Source of the DNA: Bispira polyomma
Lineage: Eukaryota
Assembly (NCBI GenBank): GCA_965649765.1
Contig: OZ287752.1
Coordinates: 37,944,001 to 38,008,000 of the forward strand
Length of the DNA stretch: 64,000 nt
Direction: 5' to 3'
Shown here in pieces: positions 3 through 61,993 of this stretch. A program made the translations under genes and the position numbers. The notes under the pieces were generated by a model. The model was given only the letters and a program-made list of their open reading frames with translations. It was not told where the DNA came from and ran no database searches. The first letter of the stretch is position 1. Each line of letters starts with the position of its first letter.

Positions 3-1232
3 TTCCAGATCAAGCGATTCAATTTTACAGAGAAGAACTGCAGCTATGTGGACTTCCCACAAGAGTTGGCAATGGAGAAGTTCTTAGTCCCCGACTATGA
101 CCGACTACTGGAAGATACGGTCTATAGACTCTACTCTGTTGTGGTTCATTCTGGAGACTCGGCCAACAACGGCCACTATACTGCTTATATCAAAGCACCC
201 GACGGGGAATGGTATCACTGCAACGATGAGACCGTTACCATGACTACAAGTGAGGCCTGCCACAATGCTGAAGATCCTTATATCTTATTTTATGAAAGAT
301 CGATCAGACCAAAGTGTCGCTCACTGTTAGGAAGATCTCTGTTGCGAAGCAGAGTGTTACTGAAGAATTGGAATGGTAGATTTCAAGAATGGCTTCCACT
401 TGTTTGGAGGCTGGCATCATTGATATGGTGTGATGTCATACCAGTGTGTTGTGACTGGTTTATTGAGGTAAATTTTGACGTGAGGTTTCTGCACAAGCTT
501 TATCTGCTGTATAGAGATATCAGACACAAATTGGAGGGCAAATCTACTAAGGTAGATATTCAAGCAATGATGGCACATGCACAGTGTAGCAGGGATATTC
601 CCGACCAAAGGAACTTAGAAGAATACAACAAGGACGCTAGACCTTCTTGTAGTTATTCACCACTTCATGGAAATGCTAGGTTGCTCTACACAAGGCAAAC
701 TCCAACAATTCCCGATATCATATTGAACGATACAAATGAAGAATATAGGGACATAGATGAAGAAATCGAGGAGGAAATTTCCAGTGATTCAACAGCTTCA
801 ACTATATTGACTAAAATAGATGAAATAATGGCAACAGCAGCAGCAACAGTTCAAAGGATGAGGCTAGAAGCTTCAGAAAGCAGCTCAGCATCAGACGAAG
901 GTCTCAGGCAACATAAAGCCAATGTTACGAAGAGAAAACAGCTTACATTTACGGAGCTCATGTATGCCGATGATTACCACAGTTTAAATTCTTCCTCAGA
1001 ATTTGATTCAGATATCTCCGTTTCGTCTGGAATTTCTTCTTCTTCCGGCAGTAATGACAATGTAGTCAAACAAAGAAGTCACCCTAAATCCCAGCATACA
1101 GAGCCCAGGAAGGAGAATAATAGTAATAATTCCTCTAAATGGTCTTTAAAACAAGGACTTTGCTCTACAATTTCATCTCTAGTAAACACTGGTATAAGTA
1201 TTTATAATAGGTATAATTCTATGGTTTTATAA
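3..1232 (+). CDS. Ubiquitin-specific protease (peptidase C19), C-terminal part, 5'-incomplete at window edge
   Basis: The frame is open from nt 3 (FQIKRFNFTEKNCSYVDFPQEL). It contains the USP His box YRLYSVVVHSG..NNGHYTAYIK, then WYHCNDETV and YILFYER, followed by an acidic/Ser-rich low-complexity tail. The Cys box would lie upstream of the window. Confidence 0.85.
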   Translation, partial: FQIKRFNFTEKNCSYVDFPQELAMEKFLVPDYDRLLEDTVYRLYSVVVHSGDSANNGHYTAYIKAPDGEWYHCNDETVTMTTSEACHNAEDPYILFYERSIRPKCRSLLGRSLLRSRVLLKNWNGRFQEWLPLVWRLASLIWCDVIPVCCDWFIEVNFDVRFLHKLYLLYRDIRHKLEGKSTKVDIQAMMAHAQCSRDIPDQRNLEEYNKDARPSCSYSPLHGNARLLYTRQTPTIPDIILNDTNEEYRDIDEEIEEEISSDSTASTILTKIDEIMATAAATVQRMRLEASESSSASDEGLRQHKANVTKRKQLTFTELMYADDYHSLNSSSEFDSDISVSSGISSSSGSNDNVVKQRSHPKSQHTEPRKENNSNNSSKWSLKQGLCSTISSLVNTGISIYNRYNSMVL

Positions 1233-1689: not shown

Positions 1690-3385
1690 TTTTTTCTTTT
1701 TGTTTATTTCTTTTCTTTCATTGACATATACATTAGCACAATTCACAAAAACACAGTTACAATACAATAAAGAACACACTGTTACAATACAATAAAGACA
1801 AAAAACCAAACAAAACAAGATACCAAAAACCCTCTCCACCCCCCCCCCCCCCCCCCCATCCTCCCCGACACTTGGACAGACTGTATATAAAAAGTATAAA
1901 AAGTGTACAATCTTTTTTATAAATTAAAAGTTTCAATATTTCACGCTCGGATAGTCTATAAAAGTTGACATATTAAACTTAAAAATTCATGTATGCATAT
2001 CTATGTGGTGACTATATCCCAATTTATATCTTGTAAAATTTGTTTCACTTCGTGGCCAGTTCCCTCAAATGATCCAGTGAGTATAACATTATATATTTCG
2101 AATTTTCTCTTGATAATATGTCTAAATTCTAGAAAAACTATATCTTTTTTATTTGTCCTGCAGTGATTTATGTACCACTTATCATAAACTATGACAAAAT
2201 TTACTATGACATTAGCTGGTATTACTTTTCCTGTCAATCCAATGCCAAACAATACTTCACAAATCGACAGTTTAATCCTAGGTTTTAAATTTGAGGCCTC
2301 TGTTAACAAACTTTCAACCAGCTCCCAAAATTGTTTGCTGTATGCACACAAGTAAATATGATGCTCTAATGTGTCGATACAGGCACAAAAATTACAAAAC
2401 GGGTTTTCTCTAATATTCCATTTATACAGATTATATTTACAGTTTAAGGTTCTATTAACGATCTTATACTGGAATGTTTGTAAATAGGTTTCCTTTATAG
2501 TATAATGTATTGCATTAAAAATACATTTCCAGGGAGCGACTTCTAAAGAAGGGAATAAATCCATCCATGTGTTAATAGAAGTAGGTTCTTTCAATTTTCT
2601 ACTTCCCAGTATAGGGCTTTATTGCTCACTTTGCTAAAGCTCATCATTTTCCCTTTTATCCTTGTACAAATATTGTGATACTGCTGCATACCCGGAGTAA
2701 TTGTCTTTAACCTTTGTTTCCATGATTTTGGTATAGCGCTACACAAAATATTATAATTGTATAAACTAATATTCCAGTTGAGTTGACTTTTTAGGTTTTG
2801 AAATTTTAGAAGATGTCCCTTATCATCTACAATATCTTTTATTGTTATATTCTTTGTATTGCTCTTTAATAATTTAAAAAGCTTGTTTTCTAGGGGTTTG
2901 CTGTCTGAACATATGAATTTGTTGTCAAAAATGTATTCATTAAATATTTCCTCCAATGTCTCTGGAGGTCTGCTGTTAATTACATGCCAGCATTCCAATA
3001 CCTGTTTGTGAAAAACATTGCGGCCTTTATCACAGTAAGATAATGGTAATTTATGCTTAATTAAATCTCTATCAATATTTAACATATACCATGTTAATGA
3101 CGCCCATTTGGGCATTTGAGTATCATTTGAAATTAATCTTTTAATCCATTTTATTTTAGCACAAATATGAATACTAAAGATATCAGGCATTCGCAGCCCT
3201 CCTGAGCTGAAGTTAGATAAAATAGTTTCTTTCTTTATCTTAGCAGGTTTTTTGTCCCATAAAAATTTGAATAACATTTTATCTATTTTCTCTAGTATAT
3301 TACTTGGACAGTAGCATTTATATGTGACTAATCTGAGGTATTACCAGAGTTTTTATAATTATCACCTTTCCTTTCCATGAGAGAC
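1690..3385 (-). mobile_element. 5'-truncated Tx1/L1-clade LINE (ORF2 C-terminus, frameshifted) with 3' UTR, A-rich tail and candidate TSD
   Basis: Motifs: LSWKGKVIIIKTLVIPQI, FLWDKKPAKIK..GGLRMPD, FQYKIVNR and the zinc knuckle CNFC..DTLEHHIYLC. There is a frameshift at about 2591, a G19 run in the 3' UTR (1839-1857), AATAAA (1703-1708) and an A-rich tail. ATTTAACTT occurs at both 1681-1689 and 3386-3394. Confidence 0.9.
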
Positions 3386-26876: not shown

Positions 26877-27067
26877 CTTGAATATTGAATTCAAATTTTT
26901 CGGACCTTTTGTATTCCTTGTTTGATCCAGCTAATGCATTACTCGCAATTCTTTCTTTGGAGTCAACAGTAAAGTGCATGGTTTCTTTTTGTGTGTCATA
27001 GTTTAGTATACTACATGAACTGGCATATCTTTTAGGTTTTTAGGGTACATAAAACTTACAGCCTCAC
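26877..27067 (-). pseudogene. Pseudogenised duplicate of exon 2 of the secreted-protein gene at 39211-42002
   Basis: Same splice sites (ttacattcttcag| ... AAG|gtatgt). A 3-nt deletion removes the first mature Cys, and a 2-nt insertion gives a frameshift and TAA. Flanking introns are homologous. Confidence 0.88.
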
Positions 27068-37160: not shown

Positions 37161-39087
37161 TGGGCTGAAAATATGAGATAGGCCAATAATACAAGGATTG
37201 ACTAAAATACATATAACTTATTTTATTTTAAAGCGTTTATTGGTGTTATAAAAGTCCAGTACTATACCTTAACTAGCTAGTATCTATACATCTAGAAGCC
37301 CGGATGTAAGAAACCATGTCAAACTGTGAATTAAACCTGAATTAACACCAACATTATGAAAATTTAACCTTATATGTTCTCATGTTTGCTTTAATTCATT
37401 AAATTTCTTCCATTTCGCAAGTACTACATATGCTTTTCTAATGATGTTTACATATATTGAAATCAGCCATTTTTGTATGGCATCAAACCTTAAACAAAAG
37501 ATCACATTTATAAAAAGATGAATATTGGAGTATTGGAAAGAGAAGATTAAAACTAAAATTTAATCAAATACTACTTTATATGCACACATGCTTATTTCAT
37601 TTTAATTGCTTCAATTCACAGATTTAGAAGTATATATATCTATACCAGACATGTGAGGTTTTACCTCGTAGTGTTTGTTATATAAACAATACATTATGTA
37701 AACTTAATGGAGTATGAGGGCCTTTAGGCCTGAGTACCCATGAACTCTACATAATGTAAGTGCTACCAGGTGTTTATCTATTATAAAACCCAACTAAAAC
37801 AATATTTTTGAATAAAAATTTAAATTAAATTAAAAACGCTTCTTTAAATATTTACTTTATTAAATGGTAAGAAAACGCTACCACAACATTATTTTCTAAT
37901 GCTACATTATTAGAAAATAATGTAGTGCCATTAGAAGATATTTTATGAAAAATAAAAGATGTGGGTCAATATTCAGTTATAAAAATACCTGACTGTTACT
38001 CAGAGCCTATTCGGTTAATTGGCAAGTTCGGAAAATTCATTCAAATATTCTATAATGAGGTTTTAAGGCAAAATTATGTGAACAAGAAATTATTAAAAAC
38101 TTTTAAGGGTAATTTTCATTGTTGCAATGGTTTCTGTTCAGCCAAATAAGATATGTGACCACGTCAGCAGTCATTGGCTGCTCGTTTAGGAGTAAATGTG
38201 TTGTCAGTAAATATCAGCTACGACACTGTCATATGTCAATCTGGCAGGGACTTTTACCTTTCTTTGTCTTGTAGATAAGCCTCATTGCGGTCTGATAGTG
38301 TATTCTAGCTTTACGCTCTTAAATGAAGAAGTATTTGATTATTATTGTTATTTCACCATAATGGCTACTAATAATGGTTCTCCAGATGTCACAAGTAGAT
38401 GCAGCTGCCGCTCTTTAACAATACAAACTGTACCAAATCAATTATGTGAATTTATGTTGTGGCATTACATTAACGAAAGCAGCAACATTAAACATGAAAG
38501 CCAGTGAAAACTTTCAAATGTTAAGTCATTCAATGATACCTGATGCATATATACCATGTGTGTTTGTTTGTAAATTATTAAAATTTGTGTCCATAAAATA
38601 GCGAATTACAGCTATAAAAACTTCAAACATACCAAGAGTCAACAACAGATAGGAAATGTAGCTCACAGTTCTCTTGACAAGTGATCTTGAGTTATATCTT
38701 TGGAGGTATATTTCTACATATCCCCACAATAATCAAAAATACGTTTTCACTGTTCTACGATGAACCAGCACTAGGTTTGTGGTTGTTTTGACTAAGAAAA
38801 TACTTGACTAACCTTTACAGGGTACATATGCAAAGGATATTTGATACTTCTAACATGTTTTTGTCTGCACGAAATGGGCTCACCGGAAATAATGGTGACT
38901 GATACTTTCCTATTGATAGCAAATGTTGTCCGACAAGTTATTTAAAATATAGACTATATTTAGACTATAGTCTAGTGGAAAATCCATTCTAAGCATTAAT
39001 AGATTGAACAAAAATGGTAATGTTTTTTTTAATTATCACTGTTTTATATAACATAAATATAAAACATAAATATATTTTTCAAAATGC

Positions 39088-39093
39088 TTTATT
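39088..39093 (-). terminator. Polyadenylation signal AATAAA of the secreted-protein gene
   Basis: About 118 nt downstream of the TAA stop, followed by T-rich sequence. Confidence 0.55.
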
Positions 39094-39210
39094 GTGTAGC
39101 TGGCTAAAATGTACAACATATTGTACGTTGTCAAGCTGAAAATGACATCATAGTAATATGCCTTCAAGGCATGTACAATTTGATATTATTTGTTCAGATG
39201 ATTGTATCTT

Positions 39211-42002
39211 TTATTCTTCGTCCATCATGCCATGGCAACTATCGGAGACAAACTTCTTGACTATTACTGTACAACCTTCACAGGGTATAAATCCAAAGGA
39301 CATTCTTATTACATTGAATGTTTGGGAAAAGCATACTCGCTGCCAGACAGTGGGATCCTCGATCTTAGCCTGTAAATTATAAAGCCAATAATATTCTGTT
39401 ATATTATGATATATTTTTATTATTGCAAAATGTGAAGGGAATAATTTTATCTTAAGTATTTGATGTTTAACAAATGATTAAGATGGTCAAGAATGTTAAG
39501 CAAACAACTGTATCTCAGTTCATCTCGACTACATAGTGTTAACAGATGATTAATATATTACTACGATTACATTACTTGACAGAGTCTCACGTACTTGCTC
39601 CCTTGATTCTGGCTCTCTATAAACACCAGTCACTTCGTCAGCTCCCATGACATCAAAACAAACTAGCCTTGAGATAAAGTCTTTTGTGACTTTACGCTGT
39701 TTTACTATAGAAAAAACCACATTTAATAGACCAGGAATATGACATACAATGACCAGAACACCCTAAGCAGTCCAATATCTTCTTTAACTTGTAATAACAA
39801 CAGAACAAACTTTAGGATGTCTAGTTGTACAAACAGGAACTTAATGTGTACCTGGCATGTTTTTTGTTCTGCATTTTATCAAGTGAGTATTTATCTATGT
39901 TATGAATTGGGTATTCTGTAACATAAACATAAATATTCAGTGGTATAGGTCTGTAGCTGAGTGAGTACAGACTATTTGATGTGTACTTGGCTGAGAGTAT
40001 ATACGGTTGCCAAAATTGCAGCAGAAAATGTAAAAGTAGTTGGCTGTTTTTTTTTAAAAATAAGCACTTTAATACCTTTGTGTCTTCTTTTATGGACAAT
40101 GATTGGTGATTGCAATGCAAAAAATCCCTAGCTAAGAAGATGTGCAATAAACAATGTGCATCCAATCAAAGACCTAGCCAATAAATATGTGGATATCTTA
40201 TTTTGTGGATACACCTGGGTCAAATACCTACAAATTGCTGGTTAATAGCTATGGAAAGAATATCAAACTCCTTAAAACACTATATATTACTTTGTAAGTA
40301 AACAAAGGTACATGTGTACTGTAAGAATTTTAAACTCGAATAATTTAAATCACAGGTGAATATCTGTGTAAATTTAAACATTAAACTGTAACATACCTTC
40401 AATATAAAATGCAAAGTTTTCGGTCCTTTTGTATTCCTTGCCTGATCCAGCTAATGCATTCTTCGCAATTCCTCCTTTTGGAGCAACACTAAAGCGCATG
40501 ACATCTTTTCGTGTGTCATAGTTTAGTACTACACCAACTGGCATATCTTTTGGGCAGTTTTTAGGGTAGACAATACTCGCAGCCTCCCCTGAAGAATGTA
40601 AATAGTACAGTTTCAACACTAAGGACATGTCTTTGTGATAATTTAGCTAATATGATCAATGTTATTCAGATGGTTTACAAGTATATCACACAAGTATATC
40701 ACACATTTTGTTTTGCACTATTTAAAATATTTTAAAGCTGAAAGTTGCAAAAGTAACACCCTCACTTACAATATTTTTAACAATATTTAAAATTTTTCTA
40801 AAGGACTCATTATAGAAAACAGCAAATATTATTGCTTATTAATAGTGACTGACTATTTTTAACATTTTCTATTTAGGAATGATGTAGTTATAGCGTCACT
40901 GTGTTGCACGGAAGAAGAAGGTAATATTTTTTGCTTCCTTGATATTCCAGATGACGAGGAAAATGCCCAATCTCATTAGTTGTTCGTACTTCATATATCG
41001 TGCTCAATGCACATAACTGATATAGCGTTGTTATATCAAAAAGAAAAAGAACAACACAAAACATATTGACACAGTACACAGATAATTTATTATATTATTG
41101 ATTTGCCTTGCATTAAAGTTGGCACAGTTTGTATTTCTCATAAATAGTCAATCTTTTATGTTTCCAACTACTGTTACATATTTTTGAAATAATTGTCCAA
41201 AAACCATTTAAATCTACTTGGTGGCAACTGTATCTCTTGTACATTTTAATTCTTGACATATGACATTAAAGTTTCTGCTTAAATTTGACATACTACCTTT
41301 CATTATCAAAGTTACAGATAATTTAATAAGTGGATTACTGCAACATGTGATGTGATACAGAAACTTATTGAACCTTTTATACACCTGTAAATTTCCACAG
41401 GAACATCTTCACATATCAATGGCAAATATCTACTGTGTGTTCAATTACGAAAGTTAAAAAGATGATGAATACATTCACGCCAGGTTACATAACATTTCCT
41501 TATATGTGAATGACATCAGTCTTTGCGGGTGAGCTTAAGTGAGTACTATTCCTGTGATTAGTTGTTAAATTAATATTGATTGTTTTTTTACAGACAAATA
41601 GTTGTGTAGGTGACGACAATCAAACATCTTAGGATCCATGAATCTCAGGATAATGAATCTACTGTAAAAGGTTTGTGGTATGTTAAATAATATCAAAGCC
41701 ACCCCTTTCAAGAAACACTAATAATACAGCTGAATTATTAAATTAATGTGTGTTGTTTGTCCAATGGTATATCTGGTAAGCCTTTCACTAGGAAATTAAT
41801 TTAGTTTTAGCTATATTGTATACGTAGACACAACAATAAAATAAATAGTTATGACCTTATTTCCGAATAAAAAGCTATTTGTACAAAAAACTTTTATAAT
41901 GAAATTCATCTTTGCAATACTAACATAAAAAATCTTAGGAAAACATAAGGCCTTACCTTGATACAGCATAACTGCAGCAATCAACAAACAGGACAGCATC
42001 AT
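39211..42002 (-). CDS. Uncharacterised secreted protein, 168 aa, 4 exons (42002-41957, 40588-40397, 39704-39595, 39369-39211)
   Basis: All introns are GT-AG with compatible phases (1,1,0) and there are no internal stops. N-terminal signal-like peptide MMLSCLLIAAVMLYQGEA; 6 Cys in the mature part; upstream TATAAAA and downstream AATAAA. Confidence 0.88.
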
Positions 42003-42088
42003 CTTTGAATGTTGTACTTCGTCAAGGAAACTCAAGAGTGTAAAGATGTTCTTGGTCTGATGTGGTAAAAACCTCAGTGGGAGGTACA

Positions 42089-42095
42089 TTTTATA
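42089..42095 (-). promoter_or_regulatory. TATA box of the secreted-protein gene
   Basis: TATAAAA about 90 nt upstream of the ATG, implying a 5' UTR of about 60 nt. Confidence 0.6.
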
Positions 42096-44869
42096 GACCT
42101 CACTCACACCTTCATGCAGTATTTTACAGCTATTCCTTATGAAAAATATGTACTTTTTACACCATTAGTTCATGTCTTTCCAGAAATTAATTATTTCCGT
42201 TGTTTTTTTAAAATGAATATACAATATATCCATGCAGCAGACATTAACACATGTTTGCACTATCATTTAATATTTTTCACAAATTTTTTATTCTTTTTTT
42301 TAATGAATATACATTTCTTTACAGAAGACATTACAAACATTGATGTTTAATCTATACTTCATCTTGGAGAGACAAAGAGCTTGGGACTGGCACATATCTT
42401 TTTTTGGCTCTAAAATGTAATTTCAAATGATGCCTGTATAAAAAAAACACTAATTACAAAAATTAATAGAACAAAGAACTGATACATGCATACGTAGAAA
42501 CATGACATATGAAATGATTTTCTGTTGTAAAGGTTTTTTACATGGAATCAATTTGCTCAAGAATTGTTCAAACATGGTCCTTTCATTAGCAAATAACTTT
42601 TGCAAAATGTGTCATAGTATGGGAAATAATTATCTTACAATAATGACCATCATGAGACAGGTGTATTTTTAAACTTGCAGCATCTTGTACAATATACATG
42701 TTTCCATTACCGTAAAGCAATATAATTTAACAACGATGAAAATAACATATTTACTTCTCTTCCAATACTTGCATAGGGTCTCAGTGGTATAGAGGTACCA
42801 GGCAAGCTCGCCTTCCACCTCTGCAGACTTGAGTATAAATTTTGTGTATTAGAAAATTGGCAACTGACACTAGCGCGTTTACAACTTCATGATTAGGATT
42901 TCTGTACCATTAAACTGCAGGCTATGATATAACGTAGTTGTTGAATGTGACATTAAACCCAAACCAAATCTTTGAAAAGGACACAAGCACCTTCGTAAAA
43001 CTAAATTGCCATAAGTCTTTATGGAATTTTGAAAATACGGATTATATTTCTGACTGATAACAAGTATATTAGCACACAATATAATTAGTTTATCAGGTAT
43101 CAAAATGTTTTGCCCCCCCTATAATTTACCTTTTTATCACTGGCATTGGCATTTTTATGAATTACTTATCCTTCAAATGTCTAAAACAAAAAATTCTGCA
43201 TTCAAATGTATGCCTATATCTGGTATTCAGAACATTATTTGACTCTTTCCTGACAGTGACAGTCAACTGCATCAGTTAGTGTCATTTACCTAACTGAACA
43301 GAGAGGCTTGATGATGACCATTTATCAACATCGTAAGTATATTAAGCCTGCCAGTGGTTATAGGACTCAGTGACAGAGGACCACCGTTTTAAGTGTTCAT
43401 CCGAGCCACAAGGCAAATGCATGTAAACATCTTGTCCAAGGATGTTATCGAATCAATAAAACTAGTGGCATGTGGCCACAGTGGACAACAAATATAAACT
43501 TTATGAAAAACAATATAAATCATGTGAATTTTGTATTAACTATATCAACATAGGTTCTTTTATCACCATTTTTATAGTGAGTTGGCCTCACAGCAATTAT
43601 AACTATAAGTCTTTATTTGTATGGCATTAAGCATAACACCACTTTCATTTGGCTAGCTTTTCTTGTAAAACCTTAATAATGTTGCTCAGAATTTAGGTCA
43701 ATGGTCAACGATAAAGAACAAATAAAATGCTAACAGTCAGGGTTAGAAACTCAAGTCAGACATTTTAACATGACAATTCTCTAGGGTAACATACTTTCTT
43801 TATTAAGTAATATTTATTAGAGATAAAATTTTCATAGAATAATGCATCAGATATAAGTTTGGCCAAGTTAGAGAAAAGAAAACATTTGTTGTAAGGAAAA
43901 TGATCGATCATACACTAACAGCAACGTGCTTGAAACCATTAGAGATGTATTATATGGAGATAAAACTTTCATGAAATAATAAAACAGCTATAATGAGTAA
44001 GTTGAAGAAAAAAGACATCAGTTGTAAAGAAAACAATCCATCATATACTAATATGTACGCAACTAAAAACAATTGGAAGCAAGAGAGCATTGATCAAAGC
44101 AATCAACAAAAAATGTATGACTGTGCGTTGTGAGACGTTGTTGCCAGGAGTAGATTAATAATGTGTCAGTATTATTTATACTTGTTTTTTCACTTTACAA
44201 GACAACACATATGATAAATATCCTGTACAGGATATTGTTGGCTTGAAGTATAACATACTTTTTGTCTTCTACACTAGTGATTTGCAGATGAACTCTTACA
44301 AAAGCAACAGTAAATCTGTGTGTCTTAAGTACAATACAGTGAAAAGACAAATGTAACAGATAAATTATTAGTTCAGAAAATTAGAACACTTTAGTCGAAA
44401 GTTATTATACAGTTTGATGGAATAAAGTACTACATCATAAAAATGTGGCTGCATTTGCGTTATCACTGAGAAAATATGACTTTGTTGTCACAAAATATAT
44501 GTGTAAAATAACAATTTAAACATAATTAATCTTCTTTTTGCTGCTTGATACACATTTAAATAATGTTGCAATAAATAACATACAATAAGATTTCACATCA
44601 GGAGAAGAGTCATATATTTTGCAATGTACATGGTACTCATTAAACACCTTAACAATGTATGACAGGAGGTTGATAGGAGACAATACCTGACTATTTTTTT
44701 TCATGTATCACCAACACAATAATAGCAGGGAAGTTGCTAAGCTAATTAAAAAATATGTCCAGCAAAATATTTTAGAGTAAAATCTAAAATATATTTAAAA
44801 GATATTTAAAATTTCACTTTTTTAAAAAGTAAGTATATTGTCTTAAATGTGGTTTTGAAATTCCTGGTC

Positions 44870-55779: not shown

Positions 55780-56840
55780 GAACGACAGATATTCGAGACA
55801 TGTTTTTTGAAGGAGAAGTCAGAGTCAAAAGTAACTAGGTTTTTCGCACTGTCAGCAGGAACAGTGCTGTTACCAAGAAGTCAAGAACCTTTTCCCTCTG
55901 ATGTTTGGAGCCAATAAGTAGAAATTCTGTTTTGTTAGGGTTGAGTTACAATTGTGAATTACTCATCTAAGATTTAATCAAGATAAGCAGCTAGCAAGCT
56001 CTTCCAGGATCTGAGAACAATTTTTGGGAGCGAGGGAGCAGTAGATCTGTGTGTCGTCTGCATATTGTGATGTGAGGATATAATACTTGCGAGGGGAGTA
56101 GTGTACAGTGAAAACAGAAGGGGCCCTAGGACAGAACCTTGAGGGACACCAAAAGGGAGATCAGAGGGAGATGATTTGGCACCGTTGACCCTGATGATTT
56201 GATCATGACATTTGAGATAGGATTCAATCCATTGAAGAACCGAGTCAGATAGCCCAAACCAAGAATTAAGGCATTCAGAAAGTATTTTGTGGTCAATTGT
56301 GTCAAATGCTGCGGGCAAATCGAGGAAGGTGAGAGCAGCCACACCACTACTATTTAAGATCAAATTGATGTCACTGCTAATTTTTAGAAGTGCTGTTTCA
56401 GTTGAATGGAATTTTCTGTAGGCTGACTGATGTGTAGTTCCCATATGGTTGGTGTACAGATGTTCATTTATTTGGAGAGCGACAGCTATTAATTTTGAGA
56501 CAAAGCTTAGATTTGATACTGGTTTGTAATTTTGGAGGTTATTTCTGTCTAGATTTGGCTTTTTGAGTATGGGGGCTACATTGGCATTTCTGAACGATTT
56601 GGGGAAGCAGTCTTCTTGGAGTGAGTAGTTTATAATGTTTGTGATTGGAGTTAATAGGATATCTGTACAATCCTTCAGTAAGAAAGTTAGAATTGGGTCT
56701 AGGTCACATTGTTTGAAAGGGGATGAAGTAATGATTTTGAGGACTTCATCTCTGCTGAGTGTTCTGAACTTTTTTAAGGTAGCTGGTTTGTGTGGTGGAG
56801 TTGGGGTGTTGAGAGAGTTGGATGCTTTGAAAGCAATTAA
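55780..56840 (-). mobile_element. L2/CR1-clade LINE RT fragment (pseudogene)
   Basis: HQSAYRKFHSTETALL, LDLPAAFDTIDH, GVPQGSVLGPLLFSLYT; frameshifted at YADD. Confidence 0.9.
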
Positions 56841-60089: not shown

Positions 60090-61993
60090 CATAAGGTTAT
60101 GGGCCTCCATAAACAAAATTCTACATGGAACATCAGACAAAGTTCTCCCCATAAACCACTGCCTTACTTTTTTAGCAGAAAAATTTGGAAAATTTTTTAT
60201 AGAAAAAATCAGCAACATTCGTGACGCCTTCCCAACGATACATCACTTCTATCCTCCAGCCCCAGGATATAAGGTTTGTAACCTGTTTCATTTTAGTACA
60301 CTGTCAGAGCTTTAAGTTCTGAAACTCATCAATTCCTCTACTATTAAATCTTGTGAATTAGATCCCATCCCAGCAGTTATTCTGAGTCAATGTCTTGACA
60401 TTCTAGTCACACCCATAACAAACATATTAAATTTTTCTCTTCGGGATGGTGTTTTTCCCACCTGTTTCAAGACGGCAAATGTAACTCCCTTGATTAAAAA
60501 ACAAGGGCTTGATAAAAACCAGCTCAAAAACTACAGACCGGTGTCAAACCTCAGCTTCGTCTTAAAAGTTATCGAGAAAGCTGTAGCTAAACAAATTTCT
60601 GACTACCTTAATAGACAAAACATTGAAAATCGCCACCAGTCTGCTTATAGAAAATTTCACTCTACAGAAAGTACCCTTTTTCCATCAGCAATGCTATCAC
60701 TCTTGCACTGGACTGCAATGACACAGTGGCCCTCACCCTTCTGGATCTTTCAGCTGCATTTGACACTATTGATCATGTCCTGCTCTGCGACACTCTCAAG
60801 CAATGGTTCGGTATAAATGGCAGTGTCCTTAAATGGATCTGATCCTACCTTACTCTTAGGGCACAAAGAATTAAACTAGATGATCACCTATCATCTTATA
60901 TAAAGCTTCCATATGGAGTACCCCAGGGATCCGTCCTTGGCCCTCTACTTTTCACCCTTTATACACATCCTCTCAGCACTGTCATCAATAAACACAATAT
61001 AAAACATCACATGTATGCAGATGACACTCAAGTCTATCTCTCCCTCAATCCACAAAATGCAAATACTAACATAGACCTACTTGCAGACTGTCTGTCTGAT
61101 GTCCAGGCGTGGATGAACTACTCCAAACTAAAGCTTAACCCTGACAAAACAGAATTCATCCTCATAGGAAACAAGAAAAACAGTGAACTCCTAAAATCTT
61201 TGTTTCCCATCTCCCTGCTGGGAAAAGACATACTACCTTCCGAAAATGCTAAAAACCTGGGTGTCACTTTTGATTCAGCTTTTTCGTTCGATACTCATAT
61301 TGCCAACATCTGTCGCTCCTGCTATTACCACATACGTGACATCAAAAGAATCAGAAACCACTTGTCCATGGATACAGCGATAACTGTGGCAAATGCCCTT
61401 TTGAGTAGCCGCCTCGACTACTGCAATTCTCTCTTGTACAGAGCAAGTCACACATTAAAAAGCTCCAGTCCATCCAAAACTACCTATGTAGGGTCATTTT
61501 TCGCCTGGGTTGTCGCACAGACGTCACTTCTTACCTCAAAAAATTACACTGGCTGCCCATTAAATCTCGAATTTTGTTTAAGATTTACGTTACCACTTTT
61601 AAGGCTGTAGTCACTCAACAGCCACCCTACCTTGCCTCCCTTCTTTCCTTCAGTAACCGCACGAGAGGCAACAGACTCTCCGTCACTTCGGTCAGACCAA
61701 TCAGAAAGGCGGGTTTCAGAGCGTTCTCCACTGCAGCTCCACGGTTATGGAACAGTCTCCCAGTTGACCTCAGATCAGTTGACACACTTATCGGTTTTAG
61801 GAAAAAGCTTAAAACCTATCTTTTTAATCTTGCCTATCCACCTTAGCTTTCCTCGTGCACGTTCCCACTTCCCTCCTGACGACTTTGCAATTTCCATGGA
61901 CTTAATGATTGGACTAATGATTCTGCTGTTGAGCTTTAGAAGATGCCTAGCATCAATAAAGTGCGTTAAAAATCTATAATAATAATAATAATA
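60090..61993 (+). mobile_element. 5'-truncated L2/CR1-clade LINE with (AAT)n tail
   Basis: NYRPVSNLSF, QSAYRKFHSTE, GVPQGSVLGP, MYADDTQVY, SRLDYCNSLL, LKTYLFNLAYPP*, then a 3' UTR and ATA-repeat tail at 61976-61993. Several frameshifts. Confidence 0.93.

What the first reader, a model, noticed from the sequence alone, without database searches (positions are those of the whole stretch)
39211..42095. Hidden 4-exon gene for an unrecognised secreted protein with 6 mature Cys
Seen: splicing gives MMLSCLLIAAVMLYQGEAASIVYPKNCPKDMPVGVVLNYDTRKDVMRFSVAPKGGIAKNALAGSGKEYKRTENFAFYIEVKQRKVTKDFISRLVCFDVMGADEVTGVYREPESREQAKIEDPTVWQRVCFSQTFNVIRMSFGFIPCEGCTVIVKKFVSDSCHGMMDEE (168 aa). It has a signal-peptide-only first exon, a TATA box and a polyA signal. 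The ORF track never assembles it. I do not recognise the family. Inference: a lineage-specific, beta-rich, disulfide-bonded secreted protein (three possible bridges, including a CxxC). Small, TATA-driven, locally duplicated genes of this kind are often tissue-specific effectors (immune, shell/mucus, gamete recognition, toxin), but the function is unknown.
Basis: partly seen in the sequence, partly recalled or inferred. Interest (0 to 1): 0.8.

Follow-up and report, generated by a model that had tools for sequence, protein, structure and literature searches.

The report
Unnamed secreted protein family, marine worm
The four small exons form a real, intact gene for a small secreted protein of an unnamed multi-copy family, seen so far only in this invertebrate (probably a worm) and one other assembly; its fold, expression and function are untested.

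Summary
On the minus strand, four exons (42002-41957, 40588-40397, 39704-39595, 39369-39211) join through three GT..AG introns (phases 1, 1, 0). They give a 507-nt frame of 168 codons plus a stop. A TATAAAA lies 93 nt before the ATG and an AATAAA 117 nt after the stop.

No RNA data could be had, because the only holder runs are genomic DNA. Support for the splice model is therefore comparative:
- The same exon order and the same intron 2 and 3 phases recur in every paralogue modelled.
- The genome holds about 20 clear exon-2 loci, in clusters on contigs C5 and C8 plus one on C2. A second species (one ENA assembly) has at least five.
- Against an older paralogue only exons 1-3 align as DNA, not introns.
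- dN/dS among the closest copies is about 0.5.
- The signal-peptide exon and the TATA position are also conserved.

Four cysteines, an ALxGS motif and a C-terminal Cys-His are invariant. The CxxC pair occurs only in this species' copies.

Searched exon by exon, Pfam, PDB sequences, a 1.84-billion-protein library and the ESM Atlas gave no named relative.

Verdict: a real gene of a lineage-restricted secreted family. Function is unknown, probably an extracellular binding or defence role.

The parts
42089..42095 (-). TATA box (TATAAAA), 93 nt before the ATG
   Evidence: A TATA-like motif lies 90-104 nt before the ATG in all seven copies where exon 1 was located, including one of the second species.
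41957..42002 (-). Exon 1 coding part (46 nt, ends in phase 1): signal peptide only
   Evidence: Homologous 40-49-nt phase-1 exons were found in paralogues B, C, D, two C8 copies and species-2 locus L057 (46 nt, AAG|gtaagg). It aligns as DNA to paralogue D although the introns do not.
40589..41956 (-). Intron 1 (gt..ag)
   Evidence: It contains a high-copy segment at about 41218-41670 (depth).
40397..40588 (-). Exon 2 (192 nt, phase 1 in and phase 1 out): signal-peptidase region, Cys27 and the invariant ALxGS motif
   Evidence: The donor G|gt in phase 1 is conserved in every copy examined.
39705..40396 (-). Intron 2 (gt..ag)
39595..39704 (-). Exon 3 (110 nt, phase 1 in and phase 0 out): invariant Cys95 in a VCF motif
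   Evidence: The acceptor ag|TAAA(A/G/C), which makes a Val-Lys junction, recurs in all but two of the copies examined: paralogue D has ag|TGAAA and species-2 locus L056 has ag|TAAGG.
39370..39594 (-). Intron 3 (gt..ag, phase 0)
39211..39369 (-). Exon 4 coding part (159 nt including the TAA): Cys129, the CxxC pair (146, 149), and the invariant C-terminal Cys161-His162
   Evidence: In nine of the ten copies checked the frame stops 0-8 codons after the Cys-His; one C8 copy (L051) reads on for at least ten.
39088..39093 (-). Polyadenylation signal AATAAA, 117 nt after the stop
26878..27065 (-). Orphan, frameshifted copy of exon 2 (pseudogene relic of the same family)
   Evidence: It is 61-70% identical in two frames, has lost the cysteine, and has no exon 3 or 4 nearby.

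Best explanation
This is a real four-exon protein-coding gene on the minus strand. It belongs to an unnamed, fast-turning-over family of small secreted proteins, known so far only from this invertebrate and one other assembly.

Inferred mechanism:
- Exon 1 supplies a cleavable signal peptide. Its hydrophobic core is LSCLLIAAVMLY. By the -3/-1 rule the likely cut is after Ala18 in Q-G-E-A|A-S.
- A product of about 150 residues enters the ER. It has near-neutral net charge and no N-glycosylation sequon.
- It is stapled by two family-invariant disulfides among Cys27, Cys95, Cys129 and Cys161. In this species a third is added, probably Cys146-Cys149.
- It is released as a soluble single-domain extracellular protein. 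There is no membrane segment and no hydrophobic C-terminus; the tail is acidic.

The family grows and decays by tandem and segmental duplication, gene conversion and pseudogenisation. The most likely role is extracellular binding or recognition (defence, mucus or matrix). That last step is inference only.
For: Shown:
- Canonical splice sites and one continuous 168-codon frame.
- Exons 2, 3 and 4 recur in the same order at the paralogous loci. A profile of exon 2 finds 24 matches in this genome, about 20 of them clear.
- Intron 2 and 3 phases (1, 0) and good donors and acceptors in all nine copies modelled; a phase-1 signal exon in the seven copies where exon 1 was found.
- A second species carries the family: exon ORFs P0001-3, P0009 and P0010 from one ENA assembly. 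Loci L056 and L057 hold exons 2-3-4 in order, and L057 also has a 46-nt phase-1 signal exon.
- Against the older paralogue D, only exons 1-3 align as DNA and the introns do not.
- dN/dS is 0.49-0.52 among copies A, B and C, with Fisher p of 0.014-0.043.
- Invariant residues include four Cys, ALxGS and the C-terminal Cys-His.
- A TATA motif lies at -90 to -104 in seven copies. AATAAA follows the stop.
- The mature part has K+R 22, D+E 21 and no NxS/T sequon.

Inferred: secretion, the cleavage site, the disulfide pairing and the extracellular role.
Against: - There is no transcript evidence. The only runs that hold the stretch are genomic DNA, with contigs running from exon into intron.
- Among the closest copies (A, B, C) exons are no better conserved than introns at the nucleotide level, 0.89-0.93 for both. 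Constraint on this particular copy is therefore only moderate.
- The signal peptide has no basic n-region and was judged by eye, not by SignalP.
- The fold is unknown. Single-exon AlphaFold2 models are of low confidence.
- Function rests on analogy with other small, duplicated secreted gene families.
Confidence: 0.75

Rival explanations
1. The family is real, but it is a very divergent branch of an already known extracellular superfamily, for example a small disulfide-stapled beta-sandwich such as the ML/NPC2-like lipid binders, or a cystatin-like fold. Searches limited to 36-63-residue exon pieces cannot see that relationship.
For: Only exon-sized pieces could be searched. A 63-position profile needs about 36 bits to reach E 0.001 in 1.84 billion proteins, so remote relatives would be missed. 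The size (about 150 aa), the signal peptide, a Cys close to each end and tandem multi-copy clusters are typical of such families (my own knowledge). The ESM Atlas gave weak beta-sandwich leads, SPRY and Neuralized, at 0.88-0.90.
Against: No Pfam family reached even E 5 in more than one member, for any of 13 exon-2 or 13 exon-4 pieces. No PDB sequence match was found. The cysteine spacing (68, 34, 17, 3, 12) does not fit the ML pattern as I recall it. There is no QxVxG cystatin motif. The ESM hits share only 124-146 of 256 features, below the 170 usual for true family hits.
Confidence: 0.25
2. This particular copy is a silent or decaying recent duplicate. The family is functional, but copy A is not expressed and is drifting towards the fate of the orphan exon at 27065..26878.
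For: There is no RNA evidence. Exon and intron identities are equal among A, B and C. A dead family member lies 13 kb away. Retroelement debris surrounds the locus.
Against: All four exons are open, and all six splice sites, the ATG, the stop, the TATA box and AATAAA are intact. All invariant family residues are kept. dN/dS is about 0.5 and significantly below 1.
Confidence: 0.12
3. It is not a gene: a chance chain of open frames and GT/AG dinucleotides in AT-rich intergenic DNA.
For: The gene is short, and GT/AG and TATA-like strings are common in DNA of 33% G+C.
Against: The same exons, order, intron phases, cysteines and stop position are conserved at 27-89% amino-acid identity across many loci and in a second species, while the introns have diverged beyond alignment.
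Confidence: 0.02

Closest known systems
Taxonomically restricted ('orphan') secreted gene families of invertebrates, e.g. the aphid secreted orphan proteins described in PMC3574423 (title and abstract only, seen)
   Same: Small proteins with a signal peptide and conserved cysteines. No detectable relatives outside a narrow lineage. Multi-copy.
   Different: The sequence is unrelated. The protein here is larger (about 150 aa mature) with only 4-6 cysteines, so it looks like a folded domain rather than a cysteine-knot peptide. Expression site and role are unknown.
ML domain proteins (NPC2, Der p 2, MD-2; Pfam PF02221)
   Same: Similar size, a signal peptide, few disulfides with a Cys near each terminus, and frequent tandem paralogue clusters in invertebrates (my own knowledge). 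This is a possible functional analogue as a small-ligand or lipid binder.
   Different: No PF02221 match at exon level. The cysteine spacing differs. The fold was not tested. It is not filed as a member.
Type-2 cystatins (Pfam PF00031)
   Same: Secreted, about 120-150 aa, few-exon genes, two disulfides in the C-terminal half, and a last Cys a few residues from the end (my own knowledge).
   Different: No QxVxG motif and no Pfam match. One invariant Cys sits near the N-terminus, which cystatins lack. It is not filed as a member.

Membership tests
This unnamed family (defined here) | Four-exon structure with intron phases 1, 1, 0 and a first exon encoding only the signal peptide | tested here: met
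   Intron 2 and 3 phases and junction positions match in all nine copies modelled, including two of the second species. A phase-1 signal exon was found in seven copies.
This unnamed family (defined here) | Invariant Cys in exon 2, Cys in exon 3, first and last Cys in exon 4, the ALxGS motif, and a C-terminal Cys-His followed closely by the stop | tested here: met
   Alignments A2, A4 and A3. Stop positions.
This unnamed family (defined here) | Expression as a spliced mRNA and secretion of the product | not testable with these tools
   No RNA run holds the stretch. The three holder runs are genomic DNA. No SignalP or experiment was available.
ML domain (PF02221, E1_DerP2_DerF2) | Match to the Pfam model | tested here: not met
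   No hit at E up to 10 for the three exon peptides, nor for 13 exon-2 and 13 exon-4 homologues at E up to 5. Caveat: only exon pieces were scanned.
ML domain (PF02221, E1_DerP2_DerF2) | Immunoglobulin-like beta-sandwich with a lipid cavity | not testable with these tools
This needs a full-length model. Single-exon models are of low confidence.
Cystatin (PF00031) | Pfam match and the QxVxG hairpin motif | tested here: not met
   No Pfam hit. No QxVxG appears in any exon translation.
SPRY / Neuralized (PF00622 / PF07177; lead from the ESM Atlas) | Pfam match, or an Atlas hit with about 170 or more shared features | tested here: not met
   Scores were 0.88-0.90 with 124-134 shared features, and the recognition value of 2033 is below 2300. 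No Pfam hit.

The most novel reading that the evidence does not exclude
The family is the founder of an undescribed extracellular domain, possibly a new fold. It would be marked by two invariant disulfides, an ALxGS motif and a C-terminal Cys-His. It would have arisen in or near the annelids and expanded by birth-and-death into three or more old subfamilies (C5, C8 and C2 types). That pattern would fit a new class of secreted recognition or defence proteins.
Probability: 0.3. Interest if true: 0.55.

Novelty: new variant of a known kind. Interest (0 to 1): 0.35.

Why it matters
Small, spliced, lineage-restricted secreted genes are easily missed, and this one is invisible to a six-frame ORF listing. 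This case gives a well-supported gene model, a family definition (exon phases, invariant residues, about 20 loci, a second species) and concrete junctions to test. If the full-length fold proves new, it adds an extracellular domain family specific to a poorly studied animal group. If it proves to be a divergent known fold, it extends that superfamily. As it stands it is a solid annotation result rather than a surprise. Families like this are common in invertebrate genomes, and there is no functional lead yet.

Tried and rejected
1. Transcript support. The look-up of sequencing runs (kind rna) returned only three runs from one study, none recorded as RNA. Read laying showed their contigs running from exon into intron and no joints at the introns. 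They are genomic DNA and say nothing on splicing.

2. Pfam on the three exon peptides, on 13 exon-2 and 13 exon-4 homologues, and on the distant C1, C2 and C7 exon ORFs. Only single chance-level hits.

3. PDB sequence profiles of exons 2 and 4. No meaningful hit.

4. ESM Atlas on exons 2 and 4. Weak SPRY and Neuralized leads for exon 2, nothing for exon 4. Rejected as evidence.

5. AlphaFold2 on exon 2 and on exon 4 alone, each with its family alignment. pLDDT was 53 and 68, too poor for a fold search.

7. The search for homologous proteins with the 120-aa open frame around the C2-type exon 2, to admit proteins of 66-210 aa. Nothing found.

8. Paper search for similar annelid families. Nothing relevant.

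9. The short exon-4-like stretch 370 nt downstream of the stop (38843..38811) was considered as an alternative last exon. Rejected: 32 nt at 84% identity, with stops in frame.

10. The upstream in-frame ATG at 40628 (an 84-aa ORF) was considered as the true start. Rejected because exon 1 and its TATA box are conserved in paralogues and in the second species, whereas that ORF extension is not.

Full report
**The observation**

The gene lies on the minus strand. Reading the window and re-deriving every boundary by script gives four exons:
- Exon 1: 42002..41957, 46 nt. ATG plus 15 codons plus 1 nt. Donor AAG|gtaagg.
- Exon 2: 40588..40397, 192 nt. Acceptor ttcttcag|. Donor AAG|gtatgt.
- Exon 3: 39704..39595, 110 nt. 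Acceptor ttctatag|. Donor CAA|gtacgt.
- Exon 4: 39369..39211, 159 nt with the TAA. Acceptor atttacag|.

The phases are 1, 1, 0. The exons sum to 507 nt, which is 168 codons plus the stop.

The mechanical ORF list shows only fragments. TATAAAA starts at 42095, 93 nt before the ATG. AATAAA starts at 39093, 117 nt after the stop. The window has no N. G+C is about 31-33% around the gene.

**Transcript evidence**

None could be obtained. The one run search found three runs from one study, none recorded as RNA. Laid on 38500-43000, their contigs cross exon-intron borders (for example 39338-39958) and show no joint at any intron. They are genomic DNA. The junctions are therefore supported only by comparison between copies.

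**Comparative evidence that the gene model is right**

Searched exon by exon against the window's own 1.04-Gb assembly, exons 2, 3 and 4 each hit the same set of loci in the same order and orientation.

- A cluster lies on contig C5 at 37.97-38.63 Mb. It holds this gene (A), copies B, C, D and E, and a dead exon inside the window.
- A second cluster lies on C8 at 11.19-11.42 Mb.
- A profile of exon 2 raises the count to 24 matches. It adds two more C8 copies and a distant member on C2. Weak matches on C1 and C7 (E 0.002-0.005) remain unconfirmed.

Several features are shared by all, or nearly all, of the copies I modelled:
- The exon-2 donor sits in phase 1 (G|gt) in every copy.
- In most copies the exon-3 acceptor reads ag|TAAA, making a Val-Lys junction. 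Paralogue D and species-2 locus L056 differ.
- Intron 3 is in phase 0, with good donor and acceptor sites.
- In nine of ten copies checked the frame stops 0-8 codons after an invariant Cys-His. One C8 copy reads on for at least ten.

Homologues of the signal-peptide exon were found upstream of B, C, D and two C8 copies. A TATA-like motif sits 90-104 nt before the ATG in all seven copies where exon 1 was located.

Against paralogue D, blastn aligns only 40389-40600, 39631-39722 and 41940-42008. Those are exons 2, 3 and 1, and nothing in the introns aligns.

Among the young copies A, B and C, exon and intron nucleotide identities are alike, 0.89-0.93. Even so, Nei-Gojobori dN/dS is 0.49-0.52, below 1 with Fisher p of 0.014-0.043. 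Similarity is mosaic: A is closest to C in exon 4 (95%) and to B in exon 2. That points to gene conversion.

**A second species**

A profile of ten exon-2 peptides was searched against 1.84 billion representative proteins.
- It gave three real hits, 71-80-aa exon ORFs at E 7e-10 to 4e-7.
- A word-based search with 13 sequences added two more.
- The three I traced come from one ENA assembly, ERZ22147071, on contigs of 0.6-4.2 Mb with about 32-35% G+C. The other two are also ENA-only.
- Loci L056 and L057 carry exons 2, 3 and 4 in order. L057 also has a 46-nt phase-1 signal exon with donor AAG|gtaagg, 3.4 kb upstream.
- A YPGPGSFID tail of exon 3 is shared by a C8 copy and L056. The C2 copy resembles P0003 (YSTKD, PNDPxKALxGS). 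So at least two, probably three, subfamilies predate the split of the two species.

The absence of an annotated full-length protein is therefore not informative.

**What the protein looks like**

Family-invariant residues are:
- exon 2: Cys11, Ala44, Leu45, Gly47, Ser48 and Phe58
- exon 3: Phe9, Cys15 and Val18
- exon 4: Cys13, Val37, Cys45 and His46

In precursor numbering the invariant cysteines are 27, 95, 129 and 161.

Cys146 and Cys149 (CxxC) are present in every copy of this genome. Both are missing together in the second species. This joint presence or absence suggests they bond with each other, and that the four invariant cysteines form two core bridges (inference).

Exon 1 encodes a 12-residue hydrophobic core. 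By the -3/-1 rule, the conserved E-A-A-S at the start of exon 2 fits a signal-peptidase site after Ala18 (inference; SignalP was not available).

The 152 residues encoded after exon 1 have K+R 22 and D+E 21, with no N-glycosylation sequon. There is no hydrophobic C-terminus.

**What it is not**

All of these searches were exon by exon.
- Pfam gave nothing for the three exon peptides, nor for 13 homologues each of exons 2 and 4.
- PDB sequence profiles gave nothing.
- The ESM Atlas gave only weak SPRY and Neuralized leads for exon 2 and nothing for exon 4.
- AlphaFold2 on single exons was of low confidence: exon 2 at pLDDT 53 with one hairpin, and exon 4 at pLDDT 68 with one helix.

The joined 168-aa protein was not searched or folded. 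That is the main gap in this report. ML-domain and cystatin membership were considered and not met on the features that could be tested.

**Best reading**

This is a real gene (about 0.75) for a small secreted, disulfide-stapled, single-domain protein. The family is lineage-restricted and evolves by birth and death:
- tandem copies
- three blocks 99.5-99.97% identical on C5
- gene conversion
- dead relics such as the frameshifted orphan exon at 27065..26878

Earlier notes of this scan call the genome 'probably annelid / marine worm'. I did not test that. An extracellular binding or defence role is the most likely function by analogy, but it is untested.

**Context**

The window also holds a ubiquitin-hydrolase (UCH) exon at 48-1232 and reverse-transcriptase debris. 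Another note places WDFY2 at about 11-19 kb.

Noticed in passing
window 26878-27065 (-): An orphan copy of exon 2 of the same family. It is split over two frames by a frameshift near 27009 and has lost the conserved Cys. No exon 3 or 4 lies within several kb. It is a pseudogene relic 13 kb from the intact gene.
   Followed up: yes
G000 contig C5, about 38.12, 38.32 and 38.585 Mb (loci L003-L012): A block carrying three family members (C, E, D, spanning at least 45 kb) occurs three times at spacings of about 200 kb and 265 kb. The 3-kb samples compared are 99.5-99.97% identical. This is either a very recent segmental triplication or an assembly duplication.
   Followed up: partly
window 38811-38843 (-), also L046:568-618 and L047:687-722: A short degenerate copy of the 3' half of exon 4, about 370 nt beyond the stop codon (32 nt at 84%, with stops in frame). 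It is present behind copies A, B and C, and is the relic of an old partial duplication.
   Followed up: yes
window 41218-41670 (intron 1): The summed contig depth in the three DNA runs is 5-10 times that of the flanks, with divergent contigs. This is probably a dispersed repeat inside intron 1.
   Followed up: no
window 40400-40422 (3' end of exon 2): In all three DNA runs one contig carries four linked differences (C>T 40400, A>G 40407, T>A 40420, G>A 40422). This is either a second allele or a near-identical paralogue laid on this copy.
   Followed up: no
L059 (G000:C2:81656500-81666499), L060 (C1), L061 (C7:27.247-27.285 Mb, three hits 19 kb apart): Distant family members lie outside the two clusters. 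The C2 locus has exon 2-, 3- and 4-like frames in order and resembles P0003 of the second species. The C1 and C7 hits are weak (E 0.002-0.005), cover only an exon-2-like piece with a CPxDCP start, and have no Pfam match.
   Followed up: partly
window 48-1232 (+); 2001-2594 (-); 55974-56444 (-); 61011-61610 (+): A long open exon with the C-terminal part of a ubiquitin carboxyl-terminal hydrolase (UCH) domain, and several reverse-transcriptase fragments (zf-RVT, RVT_1). The secreted-protein gene sits in retroelement-rich intergenic DNA.
   Followed up: partly
L058 (ENA ERZ22147071, contig ctg31520c, 4.24 Mb): A contig whose name ends in 'c', which I take to be the assembler's mark for circular. 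It is 4.24 Mb long yet carries eukaryote-style exons of this family and retroelement ORFs, so the circular label is probably an assembler artefact.
   Followed up: no
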